The notes under the pieces: generated by a model
What the model saw: only the letters and a program-made list of their open reading frames with translations
Told to the model about the DNA's origin: nothing
The model's database searches: none
Shown: piece by piece, positions 31,665 through 60,300 of the stretch
Layout: each line of letters begins with the position of its first letter
Numbering within the stretch: the first letter of the stretch is position 1
NCBI RefSeq assembly: GCF_021869535.1
Contig: NW_026262723.1
Location: forward strand, 32,054,001 to 32,118,000
Direction: 5' to 3'
DNA length: 64,000 nucleotides
DNA from: Mytilus californianus
Lineage: Eukaryota
Program-made: the position numbers and the translations under genes

Positions 31665-33824
31665 AAAAAAAGTTAAATCACAAAAATACTGAACTCCGAG
31701 GAAAATTCAAAACGGAAAGTCCATAATCAGATGGCAAAATCAAAAGCACAAACACATCAAACGAATGGACAACAACTGTGATATTCCTGACTTGGTACAG
31801 GCATTTTCTTATGTAAAAAATGGTGGATTGAACCTGGTTTTATACCGCTAAACCTCTCATTTGTATGACAGTCGCATCAAATTCCATTATATTGACAACG
31901 ATGCGTGAATAAAACTAACAGACATAATAAAAACAAACAAATATTCAACAAAGAAGCACAAATATTTTATTTATATATGCCAAATCAACCCATAAAGAAT
32001 CAAGGGATTTTGAGCACTTGGAGTGAATCGTAATTTTAACATTAACTCTTTCGTAGAATCGCGTGTTTGACGTCAGAATGTAAACGTCAAACAGGTAGAG
32101 ATATAAAATAATTTTGTCGGTCAAAGTATGCAAAAATTATTATAGAGTAATAACAGAAAGGCGGGATGTTTAAAGTACAGAGACACGTCATATGTATCAA
32201 AGAAACATAAAAAGTCACATGGACAAAGCACACAAGTAAAAATGAAAAATAATACAAACAACACAATGACGGGATGCATAAGTACAGAGCCACGTCAAAT
32301 GTATATCACAAAAACACAGACCAAACAGTAAAAGTAATATTAATAAAGACAAATAAAAGAACACTTTAACACGTTATTAAGATGATAAACAGCGTCAGTA
32401 CGCAGAATCTATACTTCAAGACTCTCATGTATTATTTGTGAAGTTGATACGGAATATTTATCCACAAGGTCTTAGTACCTTCCGATGAACTTTTTTTAGC
32501 AACTTTTTTGCTCAGACACTGGTAACGTTTTATAAAGTCTGAGTAAGAGCTGCAAACTCTTGCATGCCGAAAAAGTTGGGAAATGTATATCCCATATGAT
32601 GGTGAAGTTGGTATATTGCTACTAAGGTGGGGGAAATTGATAATTTTAAAATTAAAATCGTCTCGTTTGTCATAGATTCTGGTATTGAGATGACTGTGTA
32701 TGTCATAATTCGAGGTATAAGTCTAAAAATGAGGCGGAGGAAGCCGTGTCTGTTGTTTCTTTAATTTCTAGTTCTGGGGAATATATTAATGGAACCCAAT
32801 CAGAAAAGTTCGGATTGTTAATGGAAAGAACATCATCAATATATCTGAAGGTGAAATTAAATAATCTGGCTTCTTTGATCTTCTTGTTTTTGACAAGTGT
32901 CTGAAGGAACTCCGATTCATATGAAAATAAGAAGAGGTCGACAAGGAGAGGCGCATAGTTCGTTCCCATAGGAATGCCGACAATTTGTTGAAAAAGTCTA
33001 CCTCCAAATTCAACAAAATTATTGTCGATAAGAAACTCCAGTATACTGATCATTTGTTCCTCTGTGTAGCATGTTTTACCCTTTTGTTCGCTTTTAACAA
33101 AAGATGCCTTATGGTATCCCAAAGTAATAAATTTATAGCGTATGCTACCATTTGTATGTTGAAAGGCATTGTGGATTATTTCTTTTAGGCGATTTTTCAA
33201 TTTCACATGGGGAATGGTGGTATACAGTGTTGAAAAGTCAAAAGTTTTGATAGAACTAATTTCAGAAAAAGACCGAAATTTAAAATTATCCAGAAGTTCT
33301 TTAGAATTTTTAAGAATCCACATATGATTAATACCACTACGCGAGTAAACAGTTTCACAGTATTTCTTCTGAAGACCCTCTTTCACTGCGGACAGTATTT
33401 TAGTCAATCTAATGGACAATTCTTTGGTGGAACATGCAGAGAAGCCGGCAATGTACCGTTGTTTGAACAGAATTTTGTGAAGCTTAGGTATCCAATACAA
33501 ACAAGGTAAGTCCTCTGATTTGTTGTTCAATGTTATGTTCATTGAAGCCTTGAAGGACTTATGATTCGCCAAAATCTCAACCTTGTCTTTGTATGTGGGA
33601 TTACCTGAGTGATCATTTATTCCTAATTCTTTTACAAGACATTCATAGTAATACAATTTACATACAAAGACAATATTATTTGAAGCTTTGTCCGCAGAAA
33701 CAACAACATACTTATCATGAAGTGATGATAGACATTTCACAACCTCTTTGTCTCTTGAAATAGACTTTGATCGATCATTCACACAGTTTTTTCAACTTAT
33801 GAATGCGACGTTTTATCAGAGACC
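31665..33824 (-). mobile_element. Penelope-like retroelement, 3' half (RT and 3' tail), decayed
   Basis: ORF 32703-33782 has ADKASNN, YWIPKLHK, FDFSTLYTTIPH, GIPMGTNYAP and FRYIDD. After a +1 shift it continues YDKRDDFNF...YGIYISQL to about 32410. No C-terminal endonuclease. Confidence 0.92.
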
Positions 33825-33860
33825 TACGGAGCCCTGTTGGTCTCACACAGATTATAAAGT

Positions 33861-34420
33861 GTCTTTTAAAGTCCTGCGCTGAAGATGTGTAAAGACTAGC
33901 GCTGGAGATGTAAAGTCTAGCGCTAGAGATGTAAAGTCTAGCGCTGGAGATGTAAAGTCCAGCGCTGAAGATGTAAAGTCTAGCGCTGGAGATGTAAAGT
34001 CAAGCGCTGAAAATGTAAAGTCTAGCGTTGGGGATGTAAAGTCTAGCGTTGGAGATGTGTAAAATCTAGCGCTGGAGATATGCAAAGTCTAGCGCTGGAG
34101 ATGTAAAGTCAAGCGCTGGAGATGTAAAGTCTAGCGCTGGAGATGTAAAATCAAGCGCTGGAGATGTAAAGTCAAGCGCTGGAGATGTAAAATCAAGCGC
34201 TGGAGATGTAAAGTCCAGCGATGAAGATGTAAAGTCAAGCGCTGGAGATATAAAGTCTAGCGCTGGAGATGTAAAGTCAAGCGCTAGAAATGTAAAGTCC
34301 AGCGCTGGAGATGTAAAGTCCAGCGCTGAAGATGTAAAGTCTAGCGCTGAAGATATAAAGTGTAGCACTGAAGATGTAAAGTCAAGCGCTGGAGATGTAA
34401 AGTCTATCGCTAGAAATGTA
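33861..34420 (+). repeat. 21-bp tandem array inside the left TIR (gctggagatgtaaagtctagc)
   Basis: About 26 units visible directly. Confidence 0.95.
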
Positions 34421-34509
34421 AAATCGTGTTTTATAGCGTGTTTGAAATAAGGATGCAAGAAAGGGATCAACTTATTTTTATGTATTTTCACCTTACAGTT
34501 TGTAATAGG

Positions 34510-35716
34510 AAACATATATTTTGTCTTGGCCTTGTGCATGAATGATCAAATAATGGTCCTTCAAAAGTTTTATGACTTTAGTGCCGATCGGAAAACCAAG
34601 ATGGCTGCCACAGCCGGACATGGTTTAATATAGAACCCTATGGAGAAAAATGCAAACAACTTTTACGGAGAAACCGTTTGTCATATTGATTCAAGTTTAT
34701 GCATAAATGATCAGATATTAGTCCTTAATAAATTTACGATTTTGGTGCCGATCAGAAATCCAAGATGGCTGCCACAGATGGACATTTAATATTGAACCAT
34801 ATGGTAGTACATGTAAACTGCTCTTTTTGGTTCACCTGGTCCGAAGGACCATGTGAACTTTTGTCATCATTTTGCGTCCGTCGTCTGTCGTCGTCGTACG
34901 TAAACATCTTCTCTGAAACAAATGGGCCAATTCAAACCAAACTTGGCAGGAATGTTCCATGGGTAGACCTCGTCAAAGATTGTTCATTTGGTGCTGATCC
35001 GTAATCCAAGATGGCCGCCACCGCAGGAATTAGTTTAGCATAGAACCCTATGGGAAAACATAAAAACTGCTCTTTTTCAGATACCTTTTGACATATTGAA
35101 TCCAATATATGTCAGGACTGATCGAATAATTGTCCTTCATAAATTGTATTATTTTGGTGCCGATCGGAAATCCAAGATGGGCGCCACAGTCGAACATAGA
35201 TTAACATAGAACCCTATATATGCATGAATGATCAAATGAAGGTTCTTGATAAATTTTATGATTTTGGTGTCGACTGTAAATCCAAGAGGGCTTCCAGGGT
35301 CAAATACAATTTAACATAGAACCATATAGGAAAAAAAATGTACAAACAACTTTTACAAAGAAACTTTGACATATCGATTCCAGTTTATGGATAAATGATC
35401 AGATAATAGTCACTAATAATTTTAATGAATTCGGTGCTGATTGGAGAACCAAGATGGTCGCCACAGGCCGAGACAGTTTAACAAAGAACCATAAGGGAAA
35501 ACATGTGAACTGCTCTCTTTGAGCATCCGTATGGTACAATGAATCTACTTTATGCAGGAATGATCAAATAATGGTCCTGAATTTGACAATTTTATGATTT
35601 TTATGGCAACTGCAAATCCAACATGGATTCCATGGCCAAATATAGTTTAACATTGAATCCTATAAGAAAAACATACTAACTACTTCTTTAACCAGGCTCG
35701 CTAGAGCCTCTAGTTT
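34510..35716 (+). mobile_element. Helentron-like element(s) with ccaagatgg-containing internal repeats
   Basis: 5' hairpin gttcacctggtcc-gaa-ggaccatgtgaac (34830-34858), a (GTC)n tract, and 3' hairpin ggctc-gcta-gagcc followed by tctagttt. Confidence 0.6.
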
Positions 35717-35759
35717 AAATGCATATATCTCACGAAATTTTTTACCTGGGACCACCAAA

Positions 35760-36600
35760 TTTGGTGCCAATGTAACTTGAGGCATAAGCTTGTCAGTCGG
35801 TCACATATCGGCTGACCTTGATCTCATTTTCATGGTCCAGTGACCAGGGTCAAGTTATCATGATTAGGCCAGTTTCTCAATAACAAGGTATGGTAGGCCA
35901 ATAATAGTTGGAGTGTGAAATTCATTGTTAGGTGTACATGTCAGTCTTACATATGTCAACTGACCTTGACCTCACAAACAAGTTTTTGTGATTATGTCAG
36001 TTTCATCGGCAGTAACTAGGTATGGTAGGTCAATATTTGCTGTATGAATTTGTCATAAGGTGTACATGTCTGTGTAACATGTGTCGACTAGGTCAGTTTG
36101 ACCTCATTGTCGGTGACCAGGGTCAAGTTTTCGTGGTAAGGTTAGACTCTTAGTAACTAGATATGATAGGTCCATAATATGTGGTTTGCGAATGTGTTGT
36201 AAGGTACTGACCTTAAGGTCATTGTCATCGTCCAGTGACCAGGATCAAGTGTCTGTGAATAAGTCAGTTTCTCAGTAATTAGGTATGGTAGGTCAATAAT
36301 ATTTGGTGTGTTAATTCCTTGTAAGGTGTACATGTCGCAGTTTGACAGGTGTCAACTGATACATGTAATGACCTCATTCTCACAATCCATTTACTTTGGT
36401 CAAGTTTTCTTATTTTGATGCATTTAAGGATCCAGTTTTGGATTTCTGATACGCTTACATCTGTGTCCACCTCCATATTAAGGCGAGACATCTTCGTGAG
36501 TCTGTAAAAGTCAAATCCCCAATTCTTTGTGTAAGATGGAGGATTAAATTCCTGTTTTATGATTTTGTCTCGCCTGGATCAAAGTCACTTAAGGCGAGAC
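35760..36600. repeat. Degenerate tandem-structured repeat (gaccttgacctca / gtgaccagggtcaag)
   Basis: Motifs recur 4-5 times, with hairpin tgtctcgcct..aggcgagaca at about 36566-36601. A related piece lies at about 55820-55920. Confidence 0.5.
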
Positions 36601-38141
36601 AAAGGGATTGTTTTTTTATTGTCCCAGTATTTAATTGATCTAATAGGCAATAACACGCGTCTTTCCGCCATCCCCCTCTGTGTTTCTCCTCTGAAGTCCT
36701 TTGGCGATTGGTAAATTTGGTATGGAAGATTTCTCAATGAACAGAAGAATATATTGCATTTGCGTCGTGATTCTTGTTTTTTCTTGCCAAATATCAAACT
36801 TTGTCTTTTTTTTTTGCCAAACAAACCGTTTCCGTGCATGATTCTTCTTTGTAGTCATTTGATGGATTGGTCTGATATTTGGTATGCAAGTTTGTCCTGA
36901 TGAACAGAAAAGAAACTGCTGCAATTTTTAAATTAATTAAACCAACATTTTTAACCCCCTAATGATAATTATCACCCTTCCCTACGGCTATATCTACGTG
37001 CTGAGAGCAACCGTAAAAGTTGTCTCGAAATGGCACGTGCAGAGAGCAGAACTTATCAAGCGAGAGCAGAACTTATCAAGCGATTCTCTAAACGTTTAAA
37101 CAATATATACTACGTCAAAATTTTGATGACATATATATGTTATTTAAAAAATGTTCATTTACACATTTTGATTTCAATTAAAACGAAACTATTTAGAATT
37201 CCCGAATGAAACGTTCTAAAAACTAGCTGGACGTCGTTCTTATCAGTTCTGCTCAACGTTGCAAAAACGAACTCTACCGTTTCTCTATACAAGTATGTAA
37301 AATACCTGTGGAAAATGAAAAAGAAAGATCATTGGTCAATTTTATTAAAATGTAAAGTCATAATATGGATGATGATACAGTTGGTGAACCAGTATTGATA
37401 TGCAAAATAACATCGTGCCGCTTCCCGCACGAGGATAAAAGCTTATGTGAAGGGTTACTGCCAGTCACCCAGCGTCAAAACCGTTGCACTACGAAAAGTG
37501 TATACACAAGTTAATGTAGTCCCAACCAAAAAGATAGATCTAAATATCTAAAAGGAAACATAATTGAGCATGTATGTGCGGTAATATAAGTTGAAATAAA
37601 TTCATTGCATTGAAGTGCAAGGTTTCTAGATTATCAATAAAATAGCCTGTGATTTCAAAAATTGTACCACTTAAAGTCAAAGCAGGCAAAATGATAGGTG
37701 ACTGCAGATCACATTTACATAGCACCAACTTTTAAAATGTTGTAGGTTTGTTCATGTAGGGTGTCATGGATTTGCAACTATTTATATGAGGGACAAGGAG
37801 GAAATTGGACGGCGAAACATGAAGCATTGTTTTCGAAAGTATCTTATGAATAAGACTTGTTTTACCATGGTTAAAGGACATGTCATAATAATATATGTAT
37901 TCGAAAGGGTCTCAAGTCATGATATTCATAACTTTTATCATGCGCTTAAGACACCTCGTGACATGACTTATGATGGTCTTATGATTGTCATAAATGTTAC
38001 ATCACACATTTTTTTATTTGCTCGTGCAACATGCAGATCCAGGATTTCGACAAAAAAGGGGGCCCAAACTAGGCATCGTTTGGAGTGGTATATGCTAAAA
38101 GTCTATACATAATGTATATATATATATATATATATATATAT

Positions 38142-38329
38142 GTAGCTCCATAGGGGGCGAGGCCCTGCCCTCTCCGGCAAAATCCGTCTCTGCATGCAGC
38201 CTTTCTTACTCTTTTTTTGGCGCTGTTTGTTCTTCCGTTTAATCTGCTAAATAGTAAAGATCTTTTATTCTCCACTTCGTCAATTAAAATCCGAATCTCC
38301 TGCGACGTACAATTTGGAATCCTTTTCTT
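38142..38329 (-). pseudogene. Myb/SANT-like DNA-binding domain remnant; second copy about 47045-47233 frameshifted
   Basis: KKRIPNCTSQEIRILIDEVENKRSLLFSRLNGRTNSAKK resembles the R-x-P-N-F...E...L...V-E...L-F start of Harbinger-type Myb/SANT proteins. It ends in an (AT)n tract. Confidence 0.5.
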
Positions 38330-39280
38330 TGTAATGATTAATTTTGATAAATATTTATAATATTTCTTTCTTTATATAGTAGTTCATTAACGTATTTGCA
38401 CGGGCATTTCTTTTAGCGGGTACTCTATGTACCAAATCTTACAAGTATTCCCAATAATATAACACTTCATTACAATAAAACATGAACGCGAAGTTTTAAC
38501 CAAATTTAAACAAATTGTCAACTCAGATTTTAACCCCTCTTCATATATAATTTCATGTATATCGTGTTCATTATACTGAAAAAATATGAAATATTCGTAT
38601 AAGATAAGAATGGTAATAGTTATTATTTTCATAGTTACATGTTTTCATTTTTGACTGTCATTAGAGCATCCTGGTATGACTGTCTTATGACAGCTATGAT
38701 TTACATTCTATGGCATATCATATGATAGTCATGAAATGGTAATAAAATTTGCCTTAAGATGAATCGAAAACCAGCCCCTGGACTTTTTAAGAATCAACAA
38801 AATCAAATGTGTACTTATTTATTTCGTGTAAATAGGTATTTATTTACTGTACAGCAACCGAATTTGGAATCCAGAAAAAATCTACAGGGGCATATTTAGG
38901 AAGTTAACTGAATCAACAGGTGAACTTCGTCTTAGTTCAAATGTTGTGTTAGTGGAGTATATGTTCCATTTCCTTCCTTGAGTGTTGCAGTGTTTTTTCA
39001 TTTTTGTGGTAATTCACGATGTCAAAGAGTGGTGTCGTGTTAAAGGTCTTTTAAATTTAATTAAATATTATTTCTTACCGTTTTATTCCACATAGAAGAT
39101 CTTTTTTTAACCTGCAGTAGTTTCATTTAAAAGGAGAACTTGTATGTGTTCACGTGTGGAATTCATTGGTGGCATTAATATTCTTTCAGGTAGATAATTA
39201 GTCATGCCAAAAAATTTCTTTCGTTGCAATTTTGAAAACATCGCTTGGAGCAAATTACACTGATATCGTCCTTTTTCTTA

Positions 39281-39930
39281 AAAAAAGTTCATCGGAAGAT
39301 ACCAAGACCTTGTTGATAAACATATATGAATAGTATCAACTTCACAAATAATACGATGTTTTTGAAGATTCTAGGCACTGACGTTGTTTATCATCTTATC
39401 AATAATAACGTGTTATAGTATTCTTGTATTTGTCTTTGTAAATCAGTACTTATACTTTTTAGTCAATTTTTGGTAATATCCATTTGACGTGACTCGGTTT
39501 ATACATCCCGTCAATGTGTTATTGTGCTATGGTAAATTTGTGTATTCTTGTCTATCGTTTTTGTTAATGTGCTTTGTCAATATGCCTTTTAGTTTTTTTC
39601 TAGTTTTTCTTTGTTGACATATTTGTTTGTTTTTATAGTAATTAAGATTATAACACATTTTTACCTATTATGTCTGTTTGTTTTGTTCACACATCGTTGT
39701 CAATTTATAAAGGAATTGTATGCGACTGTCATACAAGTGAGAGGTTTAACTAGCAATAGAACCAGGTGTAATCCAAGGTTTTCTACATAAGAAATGCCTG
39801 TATTGAGTGAAGAATATGATAGTTGTTATTCGTTCGTTTGATTTGTTTGAGCTTTTGATTTTGCCATTTCCTTAGGGCCTTCCGTTTAGAATTTTCCTCG
39901 GGGTTCCGTATTTTTGCTATTTTATTTTTT
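39281..39930 (+). mobile_element. 5'-truncated Penelope-like copy (C-terminus and 3' tail); duplicate at about 48191-48841
   Basis: KKFIGRYQDLVDK...STSQII and a tail ending aattttcctcgg.gttc.gtattttt match 31665-32500 in reverse complement. Confidence 0.8.
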
Positions 39931-42900
39931 GGTACATCGCAGGGGTCTAAGCGACACGTACATAAAAGTCATAAACTAATTTTTTGAATATTTAATTACT
40001 AATGGGTGTCTTAGGAGGTCCACAAAGGTTTTATTCGAAATGTTCGGGGCATGACTAGTACGGTGGGGTGTCAGATCTTTTATTTTTTCAATTAATAATT
40101 ATGACTAGATTTTGGTTTTCTGCCAATCTAATTTTCTGTAATTTTACATCTATATGTTTTGAACTACATTTGCATGTGTACAATTACATTATATCAAGGC
40201 TCTTGTATAGCCCGATCCAAACAATTTTTCTGTTCTGTGCTTTATACTGATAAATATGTCGGGTTAACATGTACCACCAGTGTTACTTCCAGGCACATTG
40301 ATGAAGCAACCAGATAACAGCATCACAGTACCTGCATCTTCATAAATGTGGAACATGTTAAATTTTGTAACATCAGCCCAGGCATAATGCAGTTGATACT
40401 AAATACTAAAATTACTTTATTCGTTGCATAAAACGCACTTAAATGCATATGTCTTTCTTCTCGTCAAATGACAGTTTACTAGTTATCGTCCTGTACCATA
40501 ATTCTCTGAGGTGCATGTAGGTCACCCTGTTATTGATCTGTACCATAGTTATCTGAGGTGCCTGTAGTTCACCCTGTTGTTGACCTGTACCATAATTATC
40601 TCAGGTGCCTGTAGGTCTTCCTGTTTTTGATCTGTACCATAATTATCTCAGGTGCCTGTAGGTCACCATGCTATTGATCTGTACCATAATTATCCGAGGT
40701 GCTTGTAGGTCACCCTGCTATTGATCTGTACCATAATTATTCTATTTTCTTATCGTTATTCATACGTATCTTTATATATGTAATAAACGCCCTTTCGCAA
40801 TAAAACAAAAATGATAAAAATATTTTTCATCTTAAATCACTGAATCATCAGTAAACATGTGTTACATAACTGCACCATTCATGCGTTTATGCTGAACATT
40901 CCATCTTTACCAACGTGTTATTTACGAAATCTTCCTTTGAGTGTTCGGTTGTGTGATCAGATTTCTCCAGTTGTGGTCGTTTTTACAATGTAAGTACAGT
41001 TAAACTTTTACATATTATATTGTTCTAAGTTACTAACTTTTATAGAACCTATCATCATTGCCTTCTACCTTGTACAGACGACGATTCGTTGAACTGTTTT
41101 GCTATCTTTAAACATTCTGGCAGTTTTTCCCGTCCTGAAATCATATTTGCATAACAAATAATTAAACATAACATTAGAACAATGTGGTGCTACGTGCATC
41201 TTACTAGCCTTGTGCCGTCTAAGTATTTTATTTTTAGATTCTACTATTAATTTCGACTTTTCCCAAAATGTTGTTGGTTTGCAATTGTCATATCTTTTAA
41301 TTTGTCAAAATCATATACCATCCCTTACTTATGTCTGTTTTCATGACTTTTATGCAGTCTTTTTTGCATGATATTTTAATGCATACTGCAGTATTTTCCC
41401 TATATGAAAATTAATAAAAGATAATAACGGTTTCAATGTTATCACATTTATTTGTATTAATAGTGTAGACTTGCTTACTTTTCTCACCGTAATTTCTTTT
41501 CTGTATATCTTTTATACAGCTTCAGCATTCCTTTACTTCATCATGTTCAAATTTTGGCTTATTAACTTTATTGGATTCACTTTACATATTACTTACATTT
41601 ATTGCTTTATGTTCACTATATTACAAGTAGTATCAAATCAACAAGTAAATGTGTATGTTTTCCTTAGGTCTACATTTAACATATGTAAGGCCTTCATTTC
41701 TTCAAATGGTGTTGTCTAGAAATAAGATTAGACTGTTTTTCATATTACGTCAATTTACCTTAAACTTCTTTATTCTTTATAATTTGTGATGACAAATTAT
41801 TAGTATAAACGATTGTATATTTTTTTTATAATGTTTCTATTATTTAATTATTTTCATTCCAAAATCTTATATAACTTCAGCCTAAATGCAATAATACTGA
41901 TAATTAAATGAATTTAAGATTGTACCGTTATTATTTTATTCTTCTAAAAAAGACCTGAAATATTTAATTGGTCAAAATTTCAGTCTGTTGTTCATATTTT
42001 CAGTGCTATCGATTCAGTAGTTTTCACACATCTAAAGACCTTGATATCCAAGTTGTGAGTAGTTCCTATACTGTATGACTGAGATTGTGAGTTCGAACCT
42101 TGCACGAAGCATCTGGGTTCGTCTTCAATCTTGAGTTCGAAAAAAGATTGTCAGTTTTCTAGCAAGAAATATGTGTTCTCTCCGGGCAATCCAGCTTCCT
42201 CCACCAACACAATCTGGGGGCAAGGATATAGCCAAGAGTGCTGAAAGTGGCACTAAAAGTCAACAATCATTCAATCAATTAAAAACTCGAATTGTATAGT
42301 TAAAAAAAATAAATAAACAAGATGTATAAATGATATATAAGCATTATAAAATAGATATGGACTTGCTTTGCTGAGCACAACAAGAACATAAATATTGCGT
42401 TTAAGTTCCTGTTTTTTGTAGTCTGTGACAAAATAATCTCACATACGTGCAGTTACATATATGCATTTAACATTAACTATAGAAGTAAGAGTATTTCACA
42501 TTCTATAAGCCTATTCACATACATTCATATGTAACAGTAGCTATTGCAGTACGAGTATTTCACAATCTTTTCTGTTTGCTTTGTATTGTTTGCTTTGTGT
42601 ATAAAATGCCTTGATTTTGTATTTGTTTTTGTTTTGTTTGTATTTTTGTTGTTGTTGTGTTTGTTTTTGAGAGGAATGGGTGGTAACATTAAGCCCCACA
42701 GGAAATATTATGTTTTCTTGAGATGTTGAAAATAAGTTTATTCTTTTAAACTCTTCTTAAGTAGTGTTTTTCATGTTATGTAGCTTTGTTTTATTTTGAT
42801 TTCTTCTTGAATAAATCTGAAAATAAGTGGATTTTTTGTCTTTCTGAAGATCTTGATAATAGTAAGAAGATTGACTAAAAAATTAAACAATTAAAACCCG

Positions 42901-42936
42901 GGTCCATAATGTGTCAGTCCTAGGCCATAAAGTACA

Positions 42937-49401: not shown

Positions 49402-50200
49402 CTGTACCATAATTCTCTGAGGTGCATGTAGGTCACCCTGGTATTGATCTGTACCATAGTTATCTGAGTTGCCTGTATTTCACCCTGTTGTTGACCTGTA
49501 CCATAATCATCTGAGTTGCCTGTAGGTCACCCTGCTATTGATCTGTACCATAATTATCTGAGTTGCCTGTAGGTCACCCTGCTATTGATCTGTACCATAG
49601 TTATCTGAGGTGCTTGTAGTTCACCCTGTTGTTGACCTGTACCATAATTATCTCAGGTGCCTCTAGGTCATCCTGTTTTTGATCTGTGCCATAATTATCT
49701 CAAGTGCCTGTAGGTTACCATGCTATTGATCTGTACCAGAATTATCCGAGGTGCTTGTAGGTCACCCTGCTATTGATCTGTACCATAATTATCTGAGTTG
49801 CCTGTAGGTCACCCTGCTATTGATCTGTGCCATAATTATCTCAGGTGCCTGTAGGTCACCATGCTATTGATCTGTACCAGAATTATCCGAGGTGCTTGTA
49901 GGTCACCCTGCTATTGAAATGTACCATAATTATCTGAGTTGCCTGTACATATCCTATAATAGGTGCCTGTAGGTCACCCTTCTATTTTACATATTCTATC
50001 ATATGTGCCTGTCGTTCACCATTGTATTTATCCATATCATATTATAGGGGCTTGCAAGTCACCCTGCTATTTAACTTATCCTTTTTAGGTGCCTGTAGGT
50101 CACCATGTTATTTTCCCTATCATATTATAGGTGTCTGTAGGTCACTATGTTTCTTTTTCCTATCATAGGTGCATGTAAGTCACCATGCTATTTATCCATA
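49402..50200 (+). repeat. About 47-bp satellite, left arm (ctgtaccataattatctgagttgcctgtaggtcaccctgctattgat)
   Basis: Direct reading. A short truncated copy lies at about 40490-40740. Confidence 0.92.
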
Positions 50201-50343
50201 CAGTATTATAGGATTCAACCTTGATGCACCTATGATACAGATCTATATGGTGATTGTATCTGCAGGCTGTTATAATCCGCCAAAAATAGATAAATATCAG
50301 TGTGACCTTCAGGCACATATGATAGGCTATGTTACATAAATGG

Positions 50344-52620
50344 GTTTATTTACAACCACTGGGTCGATGCCACGGCTGGTGGTTTTTATTCCCGAGGTTA
50401 TCACTAGCCCGGTAGTCAGCACTTTTGTGTTGACATGAATTATCATTGATTATAAATTAACTGTTTACAAAACTTTACAGTTTTGAAATACTAAGTTAGC
50501 AGGGGTTTAAATTATTGGTGGTCCGAGGTCCGTGACCTTTCACTGTTGCAATCGGACTTTCGTTTTGGTTTCTAGCTACGCCCGACGGACCTTCGATTTT
50601 AAAGGAAATAAAATGATCTTTGCTGACCTTTTTAACCATCTGTATCGTCATTTTTAAGCCATATTATTATTAAAATTGAGGGAAAAAAATGTTTCATCAT
50701 CGACCTTGCCGACAAGTGATAAAAGTTATTTTTAACCTTGTATTTCTTGGAAACACCAGGTTATAAATAGTTGCGAGAAGTCACGTGACAAATCATTTAA
50801 TCAGTTAGACATTTTCGAACAAAATGAGTCCGTTTCACTTTGGTGTCACGTCTTTCAAGAGAAAGCCTGAAGATCATGGATGGTCTTTAACCACAGGCAC
50901 TTGTTTCTATCCATGGGAAGGTCGACTATCCATAAATATAGAAGGATATTCAACCTTCCCTTGGATAGAAACAAGTGTCTGTGTTTTCATGATCAACGTC
51001 TTTAAAAGAAATCAAATGAAGATCTCACTAAAGACCAAAAATGCGATCGTGAAAAACGGGAACGGACATTTAAGTCCCACTGGAAAATCGATCGAACCGT
51101 GGCTATTATAAGTTATCTACGTTCATATTAGTAGGTATGGATATTTTAACACCCTTCAGTACCATGTACACCCTTCGGCTTCTGTAGATAACGAATCTAT
51201 CCCCGGTCTTAGTCCAAATCTTGCGATTTTTAGAGAAATTCAACCACAAAATGTTACGTAAAAGCAACGTTTTTTTTCATTTTTTAAAAATCTTTTATTG
51301 AAATTTGGGAATTTGACATATTTTTAACTGGGTGTAGGGTACTACCTTTGGTAGAACCCTACAGGTAGTCAAATACAAGACGTTTTTAATCCATAGACAG
51401 AGAAACGGGAATGGGTCGAATTTGGCGCTCAATGTTGTGAGAGTTACTTCATAGACGGTGTGACGTCAACGTGGGTCATTTGCATAGCTAGGTCAGTAGT
51501 CCCATTCATTGACAATGTGGCAGCCAAGTGATGCATTTACTGAAATGAGTGCAAATGTTCGACATAATAAGATAAAATCGTTAGTTGATTAAATATTTAA
51601 TTACAGACATCATGGATAATCTACAGAATTCGATATTTCACAAGGAACAACCAAGGAACTAAGGAAAACGCGCGTGATGTTCCCCGTTGTAATGTGTAGC
51701 AACGTCTGTGTATATGGGTTAGCAACACCCAGGGGCTATGGGTTTTGTAACGACGTGCGTTATTCAATCAAAATCCTAGAAATATACTAAGCCGGGGATA
51801 AATTTTGATGAATCAACTGGTCTAATGTCATGCACATACTGCCAGAAGTTCCCCACCCATTCAGAAAAAGAAAGTAAGGGGAACACAAAATCTTAAAATA
51901 GACCGAATAAAAATATACAAGTGACACTTCAGCATTTATCTTATCCATGAAAGTGACCCAAATTTTAAGTCTAAACATTAATTGTCAGACACTAAACTTG
52001 GCCAATGTATTCTCAAGCAGCAATGTAAGCCTGATCAGTTAAATAGATATAAGGTTCTTTTCAACACTGCATACAGTATTGCAAAAATGGGAAACCCTTC
52101 AGTGACTATGAATTTATTCTTGAAATCCAGTGTAAAAATGGTGTTGACGTGTAAGCAGTATTTCAATATTGAAGGTTGTAAACTGTTTATTCGCTGAATA
52201 ACCCATTATATGAGAAATGAAACATCACATGAAGTTCAAATATGATGAAACAATCTAACCTTACTCCAAAAGCACATTAATTTTGTTTCTTATTGAATTA
52301 TGAAATATTTCATGTAAAAGTAGGACCTGGGATTTAGGTTGTGGACCTTTCAGTTTGGAGTGTCAAAGGTCCTGGACCTTCCAGTACAAAATGTTAATTT
52401 GAACCCCTGACTAAGGCTTGTTTACCTCAGGAATAGATTACCTTAGCTGTATTTGGCTAAACCTTTTGGTATTTTTGGTCCTCAACGCTCTTCAACTTCT
52501 TACTTTATTTGGCCTTTTTAACTTTTTTGATCCGAACGTCATTGATAAGTCTTTTGTAGACGAAACGCGCGTCTGGCGCAAAATGCAAAATTTCAATCCT
52601 GGTATTTATGATGAGTTTAT
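50344..52620 (+). mobile_element. Retrozyme monomer (50344-50499 plus 52410-52620) split by a hAT element; hammerhead at 52537-52579 mutated
   Basis: Reverse complement of the 25322-25918 family. Core reads TTGATAA-GTC..GAC-GAAA-CGCGCG-TC. Confidence 0.8.
50500..52409 (+). mobile_element. hAT-like deletion derivative with ZNF862-type transposase remnant at about 51790-52200
   Basis: TIRs CAGGGGTTTAAATTA / TAATTTGAACCCCTG. Remnant reads FDESTGLMSCTYCQKFP, LFNTAYSIAK, then shifted PFSDYEFILEIQCKNG, YFNIEGCKLFI. The TSD is not clean (actaag on both sides). Confidence 0.75.
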
Positions 52621-55568
52621 ATACATAGCTGTGTGACCTGCAGGCTCCTATGACGGGCTCTGGAAAATATCGATGAGGATAAGACCTGCATGCACCTTTG
52701 GTCAGATCTATGGTGACGTGACCTGCAGGCTCATACGATGGGCTATGGTACAGATACATATCAGTGTGACCTGCAGGTAGTTACAATAGGCTAACGTTAC
52801 ATATAAACAAAAGTGTGACCTGAAGGCAATGATGGTACAGATACATTTTGGTGTGACCTGCAGGTTCCTATGATAGGATATGGAACATAAAAAAGTGGTG
52901 TGACCTACAGGCACCTATAATAAACCTGCAGGCACTATGATAGGATACGGTACATAAAAATGCGGTGTGGCCTTCAGGCACCTACGATTTTAGATGGACA
53001 TACAAAACGCTGTGTGACCTAGAGGCACTTATGATAAACCTGCAGTCACCTATGATGGAATATTGTAAATAAAAATAAGCTGTGTGACCTACGGGCACCT
53101 ATGATAGGCTGTGGTATAAATAAATAGCAGTATGACCTGCAGGCTCCTATGAAAGGCTTAGATACAGACATGTGGCAATGTGACCTGTAGGCACCTATGA
53201 TAGGCTATGGTGCAGATCTATAGTGAAGTGACCTACAAGCACCTAGGATAGGCTATTGTACAGATCTATGGTGATGCGACCTGTAGGCACCCATGATTGA
53301 CTATGGTACAGATCTATGGTAGGGTGAACTGCAGGCACCTAAGATAGACTATAAAACAGATAAATATCAGTGTGACCTGCAGGCACCTATGATAGGCTAT
53401 GACTCAGATAAAAAATTCGACCTGTAGGCACCTATAGACTATGGTACAGGCACCTATGATAGGATTTGGTACATAAATAAAGCTGTGTGACCTACAGGCA
53501 CCTTCGATAGGCTGTGGTACAAATAAATAGCAGTGTGACCTGCAGGCTCCTATGAAAGGCTTAAGTAAAGAAATATAGCGATGTGACCTGTAGGCTTCTA
53601 TGATAGACTATGGTGCAGATCTATAGTGAATGACCTACAAGTACATATGATAGACCCATGATAGACTATGGTACAGATCTGTGGTGATGTGACATGAAGG
53701 CACATATGCTAGGCTATAGTACATATAAAATATTGTATGGCCTGCAGGCACCTATGATAGACTATGGTATAGATCTATGGTAATGTAACCTGCAGGCACT
53801 TAAGAAAAACTATAGAACAGATAGATATCAGTGTGAACTGCAGGCATCTATGATAGTCTACGGTACACATAAAACGTTGTATGGCCTGCATTCACCTATA
53901 GACTATTGTATAGAAAAAACGTTGTTGGACCTGAAGGCACCTATGATAGGATTATGTGCAGATATATGGCAATGTGACCAGCAGGCACCTATAATAGGCT
54001 ATGGTACAAATAAATAGCAGTGTGACCTACAGGCACCTATGATAGGCTATGTTGCAAATAAAAAGTTGTATGATCTACCGGCACCTATGATAGGCTATAG
54101 TGCAGATCTGTAGTGAAGTGACCGACAGGCACCTATGATAGACTATGGTGCAAAATCTATGGTGATGTAACCTGCAGGCACCTATAATAGACTAAGATAC
54201 AGATGAATAGCAATGTGACCTGCAGGCACCCATGCTAGGCTATAGTGCAGATCTATGGTGGTGTGGCCTGTAGGCACCTATTATAGTCTTTGGTACAGAT
54301 AAATAAGCAATGTGACCTGCAGGTACCAATGATAGACTATAGTACAGATCAATAGTGATGTGACCTGCAGACACCTACGATGGGCTATGGTACATATAAA
54401 AAGCTGTAAGAACTGCAGGCACCCATAATAGGCTTTGATCTATGTTGATGTGACCTGTGTGCATTTATGATAGGCTATGGTACTGATAAATAGTAGTGTG
54501 ACCTGCAGGCTCTTATGATAGGCTTTGGTGTAGATCATAAGTGAAATAACCTACAGACACCTATGCTAACTGCGAGTACTCTCAGATCTGTACTTAGTGT
54601 TTTTTGTTTGTTATTCGCATGTACAAGTACCCATCCACGTCCACTTTGTGTTATGTTAGTCTGTATTTCTATTGTATCCATTTGATGAGTTAAGCCTTTT
54701 TCAACTGATTTTTAAATTTTGTTTTTATGTTCTACTGTTACACCACGGTCCCAGGTTAGGGGAGGGTTGGCGCTTTCAAACTAGTTTAACCCCGCCACAT
54801 TCTGTATGTGCCTGTCCCAATTCAGGAACCGGTAATTCAGTGGTTGTCATTTGTTGCTGTGTTACATATTTGTTTTTCGTTTATTATTTTGTACTTAAAT
54901 TAGGCCGTTAATATAGCTGACTATGTGGTATGGGCTTTGCTCATTGTTAAACACCGAAAGGGGACCTATAGTTGTTAATTTCTGTGTCATTGGGTCTATT
55001 GTGGAGAGTTGTCTCATTGGCAATCATACCACATCTTCCTTTTATATGTATGGGGCAAATCTATAGTGATGTGCCCTGCAGGCACCTACCATACAGATAT
55101 ATAAATGAACGTATGACCTGCAGGCACCTTTAATAGCATTTGGTGCAGATCTATGGAGATTTGACCTGCAGGCTCATATTATAGGCTATGTTACAGATTA
55201 TTAGCAGTGTGACCTGCAAACTCAAATGATAGGCTTTGTTACAGATCTTAAGTGATGTGATCTGCAGGCACCTATGGTACAGATATTTTTTGGTCAGACT
55301 GTGTGAACTGCAGGCACATTTGGTACAGATAAATTATGGTGTTACCTGCAGGCACCTATAATATTGTATATGATAATACGCGTAGGTATATGCAGCACTA
55401 CTTTTTTATAAGTGGTGACTGGCAGTAACCGTTCACATAAGCTTTTATCCTCGTGCCCGCTTCCCGCGCAAAAAAGTTGGGAGAATTTGATCGTTGTTAG
55501 ATTTTACCCAGAAATATCGCCTTTGAAGGGTGATAAACATATTATCTGAATTTTTGACACTGAGATAT

Positions 55569-55674
55569 TGTAAAATATCAACCCGCTCGACAGAATATAA
55601 AGCTTTGTGGCTCGTTTGCTACGCTCACTAGCCTCCAAACTTCACATTCTGGCTCACGGGATGATATTTTACTA
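55569..55674. repeat. About 105-bp imperfect palindrome
   Basis: gtaaaatatcaacccg..agaat pairs with attct..cggga.gatatttttac. Confidence 0.6.
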
Positions 55675-57119
55675 TATCTAGCTGTCAAAATCCCGATAAT
55701 ATATACATATACCCACTGGCGGGGGACACATTTAGCTACTATGTAGCAATGCCAAGTGTTAAGGCGGTGGTAACAATGTAAACGTTTTATTAACTTGATT
55801 ATCTCAGACACCTCGGACAACCATATTGGGTATGAAATGACTTGTCAGCAAGTTGCTTTTCCCATAGCCTTGACCTCATTTTCATGGTCAAGTTGTCATG
55901 TTAAGTTTTTGGATAAGTGTTTGTAAAAAAATATGTGGTATGTATATGTGTGTCATTCTGGCAATATGAGGATAAACCCAAGGGGAAAATACAAACCCAC
56001 GTACAGGGTAAATGCGTCAATGGCAGGCCGGACATCCATCAGGACAGAAAACAGGGGAAACTGACTGGGACAACGATATATCAAGTCGAGTCGACCCAGA
56101 TACAACGGTTGCTTCCCTGATGGGGAAAGGCAAAACATCCACATTATGGAATCTCGGAATGAAACCACCCTGCAATTACAGGAACAACCAGTCCACAGAT
56201 TTCGCAATGATAAGTCTGTAAACATTCCTTGCGGAAAGAATTCCGACCAATCAGAAACAAGTATTGGTCATGGAGTCATGTTTGAAAAATGAGGGAACTT
56301 TGTAGAGATTAATGGTGAGTAGTTTCAGAGGAGAAATTAAAATTTAAAAAGTTTAACGGACGGACACAAAGTGATGGCATAAGCTTAGAAATTCTTTTGG
56401 GTCAGAATAGCTAGAACGGGTTCCGGCTCTAACTGTCACGTCTAAGTAGAAAGAGTGTATATAAGCACTAACCTATCATTTCTAGGTGTTCCAGACGGAG
56501 TTTTGGCAGGCTCAAAAATGTAGATTAGGTTTTCATGTGGTTATGTGATGATTTATGTCAGTTGCTTACCGCAGGTCGGCGGTTTCCTCCGGGTACTCGG
56601 GGTTTCTGACCAATAAAACTAACCGTCATGAAATAACCAAACAAATTATGGAAAGTTATGTTGAACCCCATCAAAATAAAAAAATTGATAATGGAAAACT
56701 AGCATGACACTCTAAAATTGTGTATCAAATTCCTTCAATTAATTCAAATATCACTACCATAAAAAGATCAGAATTTTGCTTTCAACGATGGGACACCATT
56801 AATCATGGGATAACGGCGATAACAAATTGTTATGCCTCGGGCGCGGTAAGTATGTGTTATCCAGATCACAAGGAGCAGTCTACGTCATAAACTGGTGTTG
56901 GCTTGTATTCTATGACGATGGAAGTGTGGTTGTCAGCCGAGAACCAGCTTATCTACGTCATATACCTTTTCAATTTGAAGGGCAAGAAATAGGAAACTCG
57001 TGGTTTTATGATACTTATCCTTATATGACAATAACAAATAAACCCGCCTAATTCATCTCGAAATAATTTGGAGAAAACAAATTAAAAGTTTTTAATTATT
57101 GTTCAGTGTATTGTAGTAA

Positions 57120-58486
57120 TCATGGCTCCATTATGATGCGGAATATGTTTCGCAGCTCAATATACAAGTTGGTAGCAGCATATGGATCTTCTGGTTTATC
57201 CAAATGATTTTCTCTCATAACAATACAAGCGAGATCAAAAACATTTTGTCACAAATATCTTCAGGAAATAAACATTCCTCCAGACAAGCCTCAACATCCT
57301 CTGGTCGAACAGGACATAGGAAATTAAGGGTGTCTTTATTTCTCGGACAGTTGTAGAGTATTACTGCACGGCCATGTACAGTCCCTTCGTACTTACACGG
57401 TCGGATTTTGTGATGGTTCCAAGTATCTACGACATTCTGGAATTCCCTCTATAAAATAAAAAATTACAAATCTAATTATAACATTTTTAAATTTTAGAGA
57501 CAATCAATTTCGGTTATTTAAACGGATTGAAAAATTACATTCATAGATACATTTTCCATTTTGTGTAATAATACATGTACTCAGTAGGATATGTAATGGT
57601 TAGTTGTCCATTGAACAGCAAATAGAACATTAAAGATAGTAATGGTACATAGTATATGTTTATCATACCTTCAAAAGTTTCATGAAACAAAACTGGAGAA
57701 GATTTTTGTCGATGAAATCCCCGGTATAAAATCCATCCTTCTTGAAAGTTTAAAACAGTGAGATCCAGAAATCCGTATTTTCTCTTCTAAGTACACTCCA
57801 CCAACTTTCTATACGCTGGTTGTGTTGGCTAGTACCATATATGAATGTATTCCTATGATCATTTCGATGGAAAAACGTTTGCATCTGAACTGTGTGTGTG
57901 TTTTCTGTCCCTAAGTCACCGCGCATTCTCAACGGTACGCCATATTTCTTATAACAGCTTTTATATAATATCCGGCAATTACCCGAGGGTCGCTTCTTGT
58001 TCTGTTAACATATAGCCATACAATAAATCTGGAGTAACCGTCAATGCATCCATTAATGCAAAATCCGAAAGGCTTCAGTTTATCGTAAGAATCTAGATGC
58101 CATATAAAGTTTGGCCCTTGACCATTATATTCCCGTCTCTTAAGTTTTCGCTTCAATCTGTTATTAACACTACCAGGATTTAAAGCACGCATTAAAAGTC
58201 GCACTGTTTCTTTTCTTACGGTCAGTCCACTGTGCAAACATTTTAGGTGCATCCAGCGGTATCCATTCAGCTGTCCGGACTCTTGTACTTGTTCATGAAT
58301 AAACATGGCTACGTCTAGTAGATCAGAGTAATTTTTCCTTCTGTATAATCCAAAGCTAGACAACAGCCTTTTTAGGTGACACAAAGAAATGCCAATCCTG
58401 TGTTTTTCATTAAGGATTTGTAATAGTTCCTTGTAATTAAGTCCAAGGTGAAAATACACAAAAATAAATTGATCCCTTTCTTGCAT
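57120..58486 (-). pseudogene. IS3/IS481-like (integrase-core) DDE transposase; two exons 58486-57669 and 57448-57120
   Basis: GPNFIWHLDSYDKLKPFGFCINGCIDGYSR, RGDLGTEN, HNQRIESWW, WNHHKIR. GT/AG intron 57668-57449. Frameshifts near 57948 and 57245 and a TAA near 57750. Confidence 0.88.
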
Positions 58487-58519
58487 CCTTATTTGCAACA
58501 CGCTATAAAACACGATTTT

Positions 58520-58855
58520 ACATTTCTAGCGATAGACTTTACATCTCCAGCGCTTGACTTTACTTCTTCAGTGCTACACTTTATATCTTCAGCGCTAGAC
58601 TTTACATCTTCAGCGCTGGACTTTACATCTCCAGCGCTGGACTTTACATCCCCAGCGCTAGACTTTACATCTTCAGCGCTTGACTTTACATCTCCAGCGC
58701 TAGACTTTAGATCTCCAGTGCTGGACTTTACACCTCCAGCGCTAGACTTTACATCTTCAGCGCAGGACTTTTCATCTCCAGCGCTAGACTTTACATCTCT
58801 AGCGCTTGACTTTACATCTCCAGCGCTAGACTTTACACATCTTCAGCGCAGGACT
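58520..58855 (-). repeat. 21-bp tandem array inside the right TIR, inverted relative to the left array
   Basis: About 16 units of gctagactttacatctccagc. Confidence 0.95.
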
Positions 58856-58900
58856 TTAAAAGACACTTTATAATCTGTGTGAGACCAACAGGACTCCGTA

Positions 58901-60300
58901 GAGATCTGATTGTTTTGACCCATTCTGACAAAGTGTCCAGTTCAACTTCTTCTCGTTTAGCCCATGCTCTTGCGTAGTCCTCAATGGAATTCATAATTAT
59001 TTTGAAGTTATGGTTCCAATTGATATGTTGGGGTTCTCTAAACTTAGGACCATGAGAAATCACCTTTCGGAGATTTTCATGTTGAAATATGTCCGGGTGC
59101 GGGAATTTCTCGCTGCATTGAAGACCTGTTGGTGACCATCTGCTGTTGTCTGTTCTATGGTCGGGTTGTTGTCTCTTTGACACATTCCCCATTTCCATTC
59201 TCAATTTTATTAGATCCCCAGTAATAACATGACCAGAGGGGCTGTAATTAAAAGGCGAGTGGGAACAGTCACATGTCAGAGGGTTTTTAGGTATTGTTCT
59301 AAATCAAGGTCCTGCAATGCTTGTTTATAGTTAAATACTTTGGGTGCAATGGTTTTGGTGTAACTGTAGGATACAATAGGAACAGACAGATTTTGAAAAT
59401 AAAAAGGAATTTTAGATGTTACCTTCTTGTGATGTAGAACGTTGCAGATGTTGATTGCATCAATTCCTCTATTGGTAAAGTGAACAGGAAGGAGATTTCC
59501 TCTTTTCTTCATGTAAAGGTTCCGATCTTATTGGTTTGAAAAGACGGAAAAGAGTTACATCACAAATTATACTGACAAATCTGTATATTGGAGAAAATGT
59601 ATTGATGCATCCCTTGTCAAGAGCATAATCTCTCAAACATTTAAGAAAATGAACAGGCAGTGAAAAAAAGAATAGTTCTAATGTAATGTAACCCTAGCTA
59701 GCGAATGATGAAGATGTGAAAGAAGGTCATCAAAGCTCCCAGAGGGCGATCTAGATTTGGAAGACTTTTTTACATTAGGCCGATGGTAATGTTTTTGCCC
59801 ATGACTACGTTATTGTCGTAAGGTAGTATTAAATAGACTCATTACATTAACATCACTGAAGGCTGGACTTGACAAATTTCCTACTCCTTTGACATTATCA
59901 TTGCAACCATATGGCATTGCAGTATATACCTAATTCCCTTATCCAGAAATTTTCTCTATCTTTTCGGAAAGGAGTACTGAGTACAGGGCTATCGTGATTA
60001 ACATATTACATGTCTTACACGTGCTCCTTCTTCCTTTTTTATGTTTACAAGATGAAATGAAAGGTGTTGATTCACTTGTAGCAGGTGTCTTTAAACAGTC
60101 TAAAATATTAACGCAACATGGCTTTAAATTATGAAAAGTATCTGAATTTTTAAAATAGTAATTACCTTCTGGCTGAACATACGTCAAATCAAGGGTATCC
60201 CGGTGGAACACACAAATCAAATGCTACAGTGTTCCGTGCAGCAAAAGAGGACCTTTGTAACCCGGGCGACGTCCCAGCCGGTTTGTTCTTTGTATTATTT
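58901..60300 (-). mobile_element. Same Penelope-like element, 5' half (remnant N-terminal GIY-YIG region and pre-RT region; Naiad/Chlamys-type domain order)
   Basis: CKTC, RENFWIRELG..PYGCND, NRGIDAIN, GHVITGDL, GPKFREP, EWVKTIRS. Joins in frame to the 3' half when the insertion and one TSD copy are removed. The 5' boundary is uncertain. Confidence 0.85.

What the first reader, a model, noticed from the sequence alone, without database searches (positions are those of the whole stretch)
31665..60300. Five-level nest of mobile elements spanning 28 kb with readable insertion order
Penelope-like element > IS3EU-type transposon (6-bp TSD) > Mutator-like unit (9-bp TSD) > retrozyme in the satellite arm > hAT derivative. 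Removing 33825-58900 and one TSD copy gives ACA ATC AGA TCT CTG ATA AAA CGT CGC ATT (TIRSLIKRRI), rejoining two RT-element halves 25 kb apart in frame. This one nest explains nearly half of the window and may be a hemizygous block.
Basis: seen in the sequence. Interest (0 to 1): 0.78.

Follow-up and report, generated by a model that had tools for sequence, protein, structure and literature searches.

The report
Six-deep nest of mussel transposons
A 28.7-kb stretch of a mussel genome is one old retroelement holding a stack of other jumping elements, six levels deep; it is a clean example of ordinary transposon nesting and not a new kind of element.

Summary
A Naiad-type Penelope-like retroelement (31667-60344, minus strand) is split by a 25-kb IS3EU DNA transposon (33825-58900; TA..TA ends; 6-bp duplication GAGACC/GAGATC). 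That transposon is split by an 18-kb compound foldback element (37427-55456; perfect 9-bp duplication CCGCTTCCC). The foldback's right satellite arm holds one ~366-bp retrozyme unit (50340-52620) with a decayed hammerhead. The retrozyme unit holds a 1.9-kb hAT-like element (50500-52409). I found a sixth layer, a ~690-bp high-copy repeat (about 51107-51801).

For all layers but the retrozyme, copies elsewhere in the genome show the uninterrupted site.

Corrections:
- The hAT-like element has a 6-bp, not 8-bp, duplication and no detectable transposase, so its family is unproven.
- "Mutator-like" rests only on the 9-bp duplication.
- The insertion order cannot be read from nesting depth. Layers 4-6 sit at the same positions in foldback copies elsewhere, so they arrived as passengers. 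Only three insertions happened here.
- Hemizygosity could not be tested.

This is ordinary biology, though a good textbook case. Another note of this scan (s1-320611) covers the foldback layer, 37418-55465 of this window.

The parts
31667..33824 (-). Layer 1, 3' half of a Naiad-type Penelope-like element: C-terminal RT part plus a 263-bp tail (31667-31929)
   Evidence: blastn to 8 paralogs at 90-97%. tblastn of the 1006-aa relative P0008 places aa 532-1001 on 33782-32418. YIDD and DKA motifs are present in the translation.
58907..60344 (-). Layer 1, 5' half of the same element: N-terminal region, with the GIY-YIG core largely missing
   Evidence: P0008 aa 1-526 lie on 60308-58884, and aa 115-193 have no match. 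Paralogs end at variable points between 59475 and 60344, which is 5' truncation.
33819..33824 (.). Target-site duplication of layer 2, left copy GAGACC (right copy GAGATC at 58901-58906)
   Evidence: The empty site in 8 paralogs reads CAGAGACCTGATT. Other copies of the element have 6-bp duplications CATTTG and GACAAC.
33825..58900 (-). Layer 2, IS3EU-type DNA transposon, about 7 kb of its own sequence. Ends are TACGGAG...CTCCGTA. Inverted arms of a 21-bp satellite lie at 33867-34422 and 58517-58858. Broken DDE transposase pieces lie at 57218-58513.
   Evidence: Inverted repeats. Pfam rva_4 integrase core scores 1e-11 here and 8e-27 in paralog L034:958-1818. About 8 copies at 97-98% identity. 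IS3EU hallmarks are taken from PMC10045372.
37418..37426 (.). Target-site duplication of layer 3, CCGCTTCCC (second copy at 55457-55465)
   Evidence: Sequence. Other IS3EU copies hold a single copy of the target.
37427..55456 (+). Layer 3, compound foldback element with 43-bp terminal inverted repeats. It consists of an outer truncated left arm (37427-40740), 5.4 kb of carried DNA (40741-46121), and an inner complete foldback (46122-55456) with 47/48-bp satellite arms.
   Evidence: The 5.4-kb piece recurs at 96-98% in at least 6 composite copies. The C35 copy has its own 9-bp duplication. Paired left ends 9-11 kb apart occur at 9 or more sites.
42937..46121 (+). Within the carried DNA: a fragment of a larger repeat that carries a 19-bp satellite, cut at both ends
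   Evidence: In L019-L024 the homology runs on beyond both ends. No hammerhead was found.
50340..52620 (+). Layer 4, one ~366-bp unit of the abundant mussel retrozyme family, inserted inside one satellite unit of the right arm. Its hammerhead remnant lies at 52534-52578, and the unit is interrupted by layer 5.
   Evidence: The family has 5296 candidate copies and forms head-to-tail arrays. Unit size and copy number fit PMC7229834.
50500..52409 (+). Layer 5, hAT-like non-autonomous TIR element with CAGGGGTT(T/C)AAATT ends and a 6-bp duplication ACTAAG (50490-50495 / 52410-52415). The window copy has 4 extra bases, TTAG, at the left junction.
   Evidence: Absent from L026 and L028, present at the same site in L036 and L038-L040, and the right end is confirmed by the independent copy L037. 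The only coding hint is a weak zf-C17orf113 match, E 0.009.
51107..51801 (+). Layer 6, a ~690-bp high-copy unclassified repeat inside layer 5. Its ends are approximate, to about 10 bp.
   Evidence: The copy at C1:88634939-88636154 joins 50500-51106 directly to 51792-52409. There are 802 or more candidate copies at 94-97%.
59093..59209 (.). Side branch: a 117-bp small repeat inserted in the host retroelement
   Evidence: Absent from all paralogs. Contigs of other runs skip 59093-59209. Other copies in the window lie at 3398-3516, 11994-12109 and 63401-63485.

Best explanation
The region is a six-level nest of transposable elements in a mussel genome, built by three local insertion events.

1. 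A Naiad-clade Penelope-like retroelement, about 3.5 kb and now full of frameshifts, was inserted by target-primed reverse transcription.

2. A 7-kb IS3EU DNA transposon then cut-and-pasted into its coding region and made a 6-bp duplication.

3. An 18-kb compound foldback element then transposed into the IS3EU element, using its outermost 43-bp inverted ends and making a 9-bp duplication.

The foldback arrived already loaded with:
- a truncated second left arm;
- 5.4 kb of foreign DNA;
- one retrozyme unit sitting in its satellite arm;
- a hAT-like element inside that unit;
- a ~690-bp repeat inside the hAT-like element.

Shown: all boundaries and duplications; the empty sites in paralogs for every layer but the retrozyme; the family of layers 1, 2 and 4; and that layers 4-6 are shared with foldback copies elsewhere.

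Inferred: the transposition mechanisms; the superfamily of layers 3, 5 and 6; and that the retrozyme unit entered an ancestral foldback, since no foldback copy without it was seen.
For: Layer 1:
- Contiguous match of the two halves to 8 paralogs and to P0008 (aa ...526 | 532...).
- Relatives of about 1000 aa have GIY-YIG at aa 130-220 and RT at aa 640-860.
- CxC and DKA motifs are present, the body is 3.5 kb, and no hammerhead was found, as described for Naiads.

Layer 2:
- TA..TA termini, 6-bp duplications in 3 copies, and an rva_4/rve DDE ORF.

Layer 3:
- Perfect 9-bp duplications in two copies, and empty sites in all other IS3EU copies.

Layer 4:
- A ~366-bp unit belonging to a family of more than 5000 candidate copies, with tandem arrays.
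- Hammerhead_1 scores 27.7 bits in the sister copy and 21.7 bits in uninterrupted foldback-borne copies.

Layers 5 and 6:
- Empty and filled sites are both seen in paralogs.

Passenger status:
- The same inner insertions sit at the same positions in L036 and L038-L040. These lie at other genomic sites, outside any IS3EU copy.
Against: - No hammerhead hit reaches Rfam's gathering score (34 bits). The nest copy has two core changes (C3 to U, G8 to A), so it is only a dead relic.
- The hAT-like element has a 6-bp rather than 8-bp duplication and no hAT domain.
- No transposase was found for the foldback family.
- No foldback copy without the retrozyme unit was seen, so its status as an insertion rests on the family's independent abundance and on the broken satellite unit at its flanks.
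- Junctions were not confirmed by raw long reads.
Confidence: 0.9

Rival explanations
1. Strict outside-in chronology: each inner element inserted at this locus after the one that contains it, so depth equals local insertion order for all layers.
For: Nesting geometry alone. The duplication of layer 3 is perfect and that of layer 2 has one mismatch, which fits the order for layers 1 to 3.
Against: Layers 4, 5 and 6 are found at identical positions, with identical junctions, in foldback copies at other genomic sites (L036, L038-L040). Layer 6 is also inside an independent copy of layer 5 (L037). The foldback-borne retrozyme units are 97-99% alike but only 88-89% like free copies.
Confidence: 0.04
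2. Assembly artefact: the 25-kb and 18-kb blocks are false joins between repeat copies made by the assembler.
For: The region is almost wholly repetitive. The short-read contig pieces listed for other runs (only the longest are shown) include none that bridges a nest junction.
Against: Each layer is bounded by matched target duplications of the length typical of its family, 25 kb and 18 kb apart. The host sequence resumes at the exact next base and in the same frame. A false join would not produce this.
Confidence: 0.03
3. The 18-kb unit is not one mobile element. It is two neighbouring foldback insertions plus local DNA that only look like a unit.
For: A third, internal copy of the left terminal repeat lies at 46122, and arm A is truncated at 40740.
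Against: The 9-bp duplication flanks the outermost ends only. The flank of the inner end at 46122 shows no matching duplication. The same composite, including its 5.4-kb middle, recurs at 6 or more sites, one of them with its own 9-bp duplication. All other IS3EU copies lack the whole 18 kb at once.
Confidence: 0.03

Closest known systems
Naiad clade of Penelope-like elements (Craig et al. 2021, PMC8557442)
   Same: Full-length relatives have an N-terminal GIY-YIG followed by RT. CxC and DKA motifs are present. The body is about 3.5 kb and there is no canonical hammerhead. Copy number is very high in an invertebrate genome, and copies show 5' truncation and tail repeats.
   Different: The window copy is dead: it has frameshifts, and the endonuclease core (aa 115-193 of the relative) is missing. 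Placement on a tree was not computed.
IS3EU/GingerRoot DNA transposons (Kojima 2023, PMC10045372)
   Same: TA..TA termini, a 6-bp target duplication, and an integrase-type DDE transposase without an HHCC zinc finger, with the first catalytic D about 145 residues from the ORF start.
   Different: Long subterminal arms of a 21-bp satellite (26 and 16 units). The transposase is in pieces in every copy examined; the longest open frame is 287 aa. No phylogeny was made.
Foldback elements and FB-bounded composite transposons of Drosophila (from general knowledge, not checked in a paper here)
   Same: Long inverted arms built of tandem repeats, a 9-bp target duplication, and the ability of two ends to move intervening foreign DNA as one unit.
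   Different: Unrelated sequence. The two left ends are in direct orientation, one of them on a truncated arm. No transposase partner was identified.
Mussel non-LTR retrozymes with type I hammerheads (Cervera and de la Pena 2020, PMC7229834)
   Same: The unit is about 366 bp (350-390 bp published) and there are about 5000 copies. Copies form head-to-tail arrays. The type I hammerhead core reads CUGAUGAGUC...GAUGAAAC in a sister copy.
   Different: The nest copy is a single unit whose hammerhead carries two core mutations, so it cannot self-cleave as written. All Rfam scores are below the gathering threshold.
hAT superfamily non-autonomous elements
   Same: Short terminal inverted repeats beginning with CAGGGG, and a size of 1.2 kb without the inner insert.
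   Different: The target duplication is 6 bp, not 8 bp. No hAT transposase or dimerisation domain was detected.

Membership tests
Penelope-like element, Naiad clade | Reverse transcriptase of PLE type | tested here: met
   The 716-aa open frame of paralog L011 is 63% identical over 710 aa to P0008, which carries RVT_1. YIDD and GIPMGTN motifs are present in the window copy.
Penelope-like element, Naiad clade | GIY-YIG endonuclease N-terminal to the RT | tested here: met
   PF01541 lies at aa 130-222 and RVT_1 at aa 640-857 in P0008, P0029, P0007 and P0045. In the window copy aa 115-193 of this domain are missing.
Penelope-like element, Naiad clade | CxC motif and DKA variant of the DKG motif | tested here: met
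   L011 has TCGCS. The window copy has VVSADKASNN. The definition is from PMC8557442.
Penelope-like element, Naiad clade | No canonical hammerhead; body of 3.4-4.4 kb | tested here: met
   No Rfam hammerhead in the host or its tail. The body is about 3.48 kb after removing the inserts.
IS3EU / GingerRoot | TA..TA termini | tested here: met
   Ends read TACGGAG...CTCCGTA in the window, L030 and L031. Criterion from PMC10045372.
IS3EU / GingerRoot | 6-bp target-site duplication | tested here: met
   GAGACC/GAGATC, CATTTG/CATTTG and GACAAC/GACAAC.
IS3EU / GingerRoot | DDE transposase that groups with IS3EU/GingerRoot proteins | tested here: inconclusive
   The Pfam rva_4 integrase core scores 8e-27 and rve scores 0.019, and the D, D and E residues are visible. 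No reference IS3EU proteins were at hand for a tree.
Foldback / Mutator-like | 9-bp target-site duplication and long inverted arms of tandem repeats | tested here: met
   CCGCTTCCC and ATTAAAAAT. The 43-bp ends are 98% complementary and the arms are built of 47/48-bp satellites.
Foldback / Mutator-like | MULE-type transposase in autonomous members | not testable with these tools
   No coding match in the arms apart from a weak Myb/SANT fragment.
Metazoan non-LTR retrozyme | Short unit that occurs in head-to-tail arrays | tested here: met
   Arrays with a period of about 366 bp, for example four units at C87:9455854-9457328. Single units are preceded by a 57-bp partial unit.
Metazoan non-LTR retrozyme | Type I hammerhead ribozyme in each unit | tested here: inconclusive
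   The sister copy at 25721-25764 has an intact core: 27.7 bits, E 1.8e-4. Foldback-borne copies score 21.7 bits with G8 changed to A. The nest copy has C3 changed to U as well and is not detected. All scores are under the gathering score of 34.
Metazoan non-LTR retrozyme | Expression as circular RNA | not tested
   No RNA runs were examined.
hAT | 8-bp target-site duplication | tested here: not met
   The duplication is the 6-bp ACTAAG in five copies that share the site.
hAT | hAT transposase or dimerisation domain, or clear derivation from an autonomous hAT | tested here: inconclusive
   The only signal is zf-C17orf113 at E 0.009, below the cut-off. There were no other Pfam hits and the Atlas look-up was uninformative.

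The most novel reading that the evidence does not exclude
The compound foldback element acts as a vehicle. It repeatedly moves a fixed load of unrelated mobile DNA around the mussel genome: a retrozyme unit, a hAT-like element with its own insert, and 5.4 kb of foreign sequence. This foldback family and the IS3EU family may still be active, with copies 97-98% alike and a perfect 9-bp duplication. If so, this nest would be a recent insertion that is polymorphic or hemizygous in the population.
Probability: 0.3. Interest if true: 0.45.

Novelty: new member of a known kind. Interest (0 to 1): 0.3.

Why it matters
The locus explains 45% of the window without any gene. It gives exact ends and target duplications for five of the six repeat families of a mussel genome (the innermost only approximately), which helps repeat annotation.

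Its general lesson is methodological. In nests that involve DNA transposons, depth does not give time, because a transposon carries its earlier inserts with it. Dating by nesting order, common for LTR elements in plants, would be wrong here for half the layers.

It also shows a retrozyme unit being spread by a DNA transposon rather than by reverse transcription.

Tried and rejected
- I first rejected the retrozyme claim. Rfam found no hammerhead in the window at the gathering score or at E up to 5. My own CUGANGA...GAAA scan was also empty. The 3.2-kb carried fragment and its full copies had none either. The claim was rescued only when uninterrupted paralogs of the foldback's inner spacer were scanned and their family was traced.
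- An 8-bp duplication with ACGGAG ends for layer 2 was considered. I rejected it because L030 and L031 fit only 6 bp with TA..TA ends.
- Pfam scans of the open frames in the arms, the carried DNA and the left part of IS3EU gave nothing above cut-off.
- The Atlas look-up of the hAT-like coding remnant was uninformative.
The duplication and type of layer 6 therefore stay open.
- Laying public runs gave only collapsed short-read contigs. These show the paralogous empty sites and cannot decide presence, absence or hemizygosity of this nest.
- The costly representative protein search was not used.
Full report
**Setting.** The window is C143:32054001-32118000 of a 1.65-Gb genome in 175 contigs. Protein relatives come from bivalves such as Pinctada. 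Earlier notes of this scan call the genome a Mytilus-type mussel. The flagged stretch, 31665-60300, is 45% of the window.

**Layer 1, the host.** The sequence left of 33825 and right of 58900 belongs to one high-copy repeat, with more than 3000 candidate copies at 90-97% identity.
- Eight paralogs read straight through the site as ...TTTTATCAGAGACCTGATTG....
- Paralog L011 has a 716-aa open frame across the site that contains ...EWVKTIRSLIKRRIHKLKN....
- In the window the right half ends in ...EWVKTIR. The left half continues with SLIKRRIHKLK and then loses the frame through one extra A. It resumes as NCVNDR...ADKASNN...YIDD.
- The L011 protein is 63% identical over 710 residues to P0008. P0008 and other relatives of about 1000 aa carry GIY-YIG at aa 130-220 and RVT_1 at aa 640-860.
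- An N-terminal endonuclease, the CxC and DKA motifs, a 3.4-4.4-kb body and the lack of canonical hammerheads define the Naiad clade of Penelope-like elements (PMC8557442). All are met here.
- tblastn of P0008 places aa 1-526 on 60308-58884 and aa 532-1001 on 33782-32418, with aa 115-193 missing. The two halves are one element, nearly full length but dead.

**Layer 2.** The insert 33825-58900 ends in TACGGAG...CTCCGTA. Its arms are a 21-bp satellite, with 26 and 16 units in inverted orientation.
- The duplication is GAGACC/GAGATC. An 8-bp reading was possible in this copy alone. Two other copies fit only 6 bp, CATTTG and GACAAC, with TA..TA ends.
- The element's own sequence is about 7 kb and occurs in about eight copies at 97-98% identity.
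- Open frames on the minus strand at 57750-58513 show the D, D and E residues of an integrase-type core. Pfam rva_4 scores 1e-11 in the window and 8e-27 in the 287-aa frame of paralog L034.
- According to PMC10045372, complete IS3EU families always have TA..TA termini and usually 6-bp duplications, and their transposases lack the HHCC finger.
- The structural hallmarks are met.

**Layer 3.** A 43-bp terminal repeat (GCACGAGGATAAAAGC...) stands at 37427, again in direct orientation at 46122, and inverted at 55456.
- The outermost ends are flanked by a perfect 9-bp duplication, CCGCTTCCC.
- In every other IS3EU copy, 37417 and 55466 are separated by a single copy of those 9 bp.
- Inside, 37427-40740 repeats 46122-49651 at 95% identity. 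Between them lie 5.4 kb (40741-46121). These recur at 96-98% identity, with the same ends, in at least six other composite copies.
- The right 3.2 kb of that piece is a fragment of a larger repeat that carries a 19-bp satellite.
- The copy on C35 has its own 9-bp duplication, ATTAAAAAT, around the outermost ends. Paired left ends 9-11 kb apart occur at nine or more sites.
- The composite therefore moves as one unit.
- A 9-bp duplication and satellite arms recall foldback elements and Mutator-like elements. No transposase was found, so the superfamily is inferred only.
- This layer is the subject of another note of the scan (s1-320611).

**Layer 4.** I first thought the retrozyme claim was wrong.
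- Two foldback copies that lack layer 5 (L026, L028) gave a sub-threshold Hammerhead_1 match of 21.7 bits, E 0.39.
- The surrounding 365 bp belong to a family with 5296 candidate copies. It forms head-to-tail arrays with a period of about 366 bp, and its single units are preceded by a 57-bp partial unit.
- A sister copy in this window (25323-25916, minus strand) has an intact core, CUGAUGAGUC...GAUGAAAC, scoring 27.7 bits with E 1.8e-4.
- Size and copy number fit the published Mytilus retrozymes: 350-390 bp units and about 5000 hammerheads (PMC7229834).
- In the nest the unit spans 50340-50499 and 52410-52620. It sits inside one 48-bp satellite unit of the right arm.
- Its hammerhead reads CAUUGAUAAG..., with C3 changed to U and G8 changed to A, so it is a relic.
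- All foldback copies examined carry this unit. Those copies are 97-99% alike but only 88-89% like free units. This points to one ancestral insertion.

**Layers 5 and 6.** Element 50500-52409 has CAGGGGTT(T/C)AAATT ends.
- L026 and L028 show the empty site. L036 and L038-L040 show the filled site with a 6-bp duplication, ACTAAG. The window copy has four extra bases.
- An independent copy (L037) confirms the right end.
- The duplication length does not fit hAT, and no hAT domain was detected.
- Inside it, about 51107-51801 is a ~690-bp repeat with 802 or more candidate copies. It is absent from the copy at C1:88634939-88636154 but present in L036 and L037.

**Chronology.** Layers 4-6 sit at identical positions in foldback copies elsewhere, and those sites are not inside IS3EU. 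They therefore predate the arrival of the foldback here.
- Only three events are local: retroelement, then IS3EU, then the loaded foldback.
- The one mismatch in the IS3EU duplication, against the perfect foldback duplication, agrees with that order.

**Reads.** Twenty public runs hold about 55% of the words of 55300-59100, but all are short-read contigs. Laid on 54900-59300, they show the collapsed IS3EU body starting at 55457 and continuing into the uninterrupted IS3EU sequence. They also show host copies lacking 59093-59209. The pieces listed (only the longest are shown) include none that bridges a nest junction. This neither supports nor refutes hemizygosity.

**Verdict.** The nest is real and precisely bounded. 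The family labels are mostly right, it is one level deeper than claimed, and the chronological reading needs correction. It is ordinary transposon biology.

Noticed in passing
window 25323-25916 (minus strand): About 1.6 head-to-tail units of the same ~366-bp retrozyme family. It has an intact-core type I hammerhead at 25721-25764 (27.7 bits, below Rfam's gathering score of 34).
   Followed up: partly
window 59093-59209; also 3398-3516, 11994-12109, 63401-63485: A 117-bp small repeat inserted in the host retroelement and present three more times in the window. Contigs from other runs skip it. Its type is unknown.
   Followed up: partly
window 39666-39930 and 48577-48841: Both left arms of the foldback contain a 263-bp piece that is 81-82% identical, in inverted orientation, to the 3' tail of the Naiad host (31667-31929). 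A weaker relative lies at 60646-60754.
   Followed up: no
window 46345-46565: The inner left arm has about 212 bp that the outer arm lacks (37656-37664), so the two arms differ by one indel as well as by 5% substitutions.
   Followed up: no
window 36929-36932: The window's IS3EU copy lacks about 185 bp that six paralogous copies have at this point. The 110-166-bp repeats near 35209 also vary in number among copies.
   Followed up: no
window 50889-50986: A near-perfect 43-bp hairpin inside the hAT-like element gives sub-threshold plant microRNA-precursor matches (MIR9783, 43 bits against a gathering score of 100). This is most likely just a palindrome.
   Followed up: no
window 38072-38371 (minus strand): An open frame in the foldback arm has a weak Myb/SANT-like DNA-binding match (E 5e-4, just under the cut-off). 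It could be a captured or relic gene fragment.
   Followed up: no
window 2304-2600 (minus strand): A fragment of a different Penelope-like element, 34% identical to the C-terminal 100 residues of P0008.
   Followed up: no
G000:C90:5649117-5649989: In one composite copy, a 64-bp piece of the carried DNA (window 42464-42568) is expanded into a tandem array of a dozen or more units.
   Followed up: no
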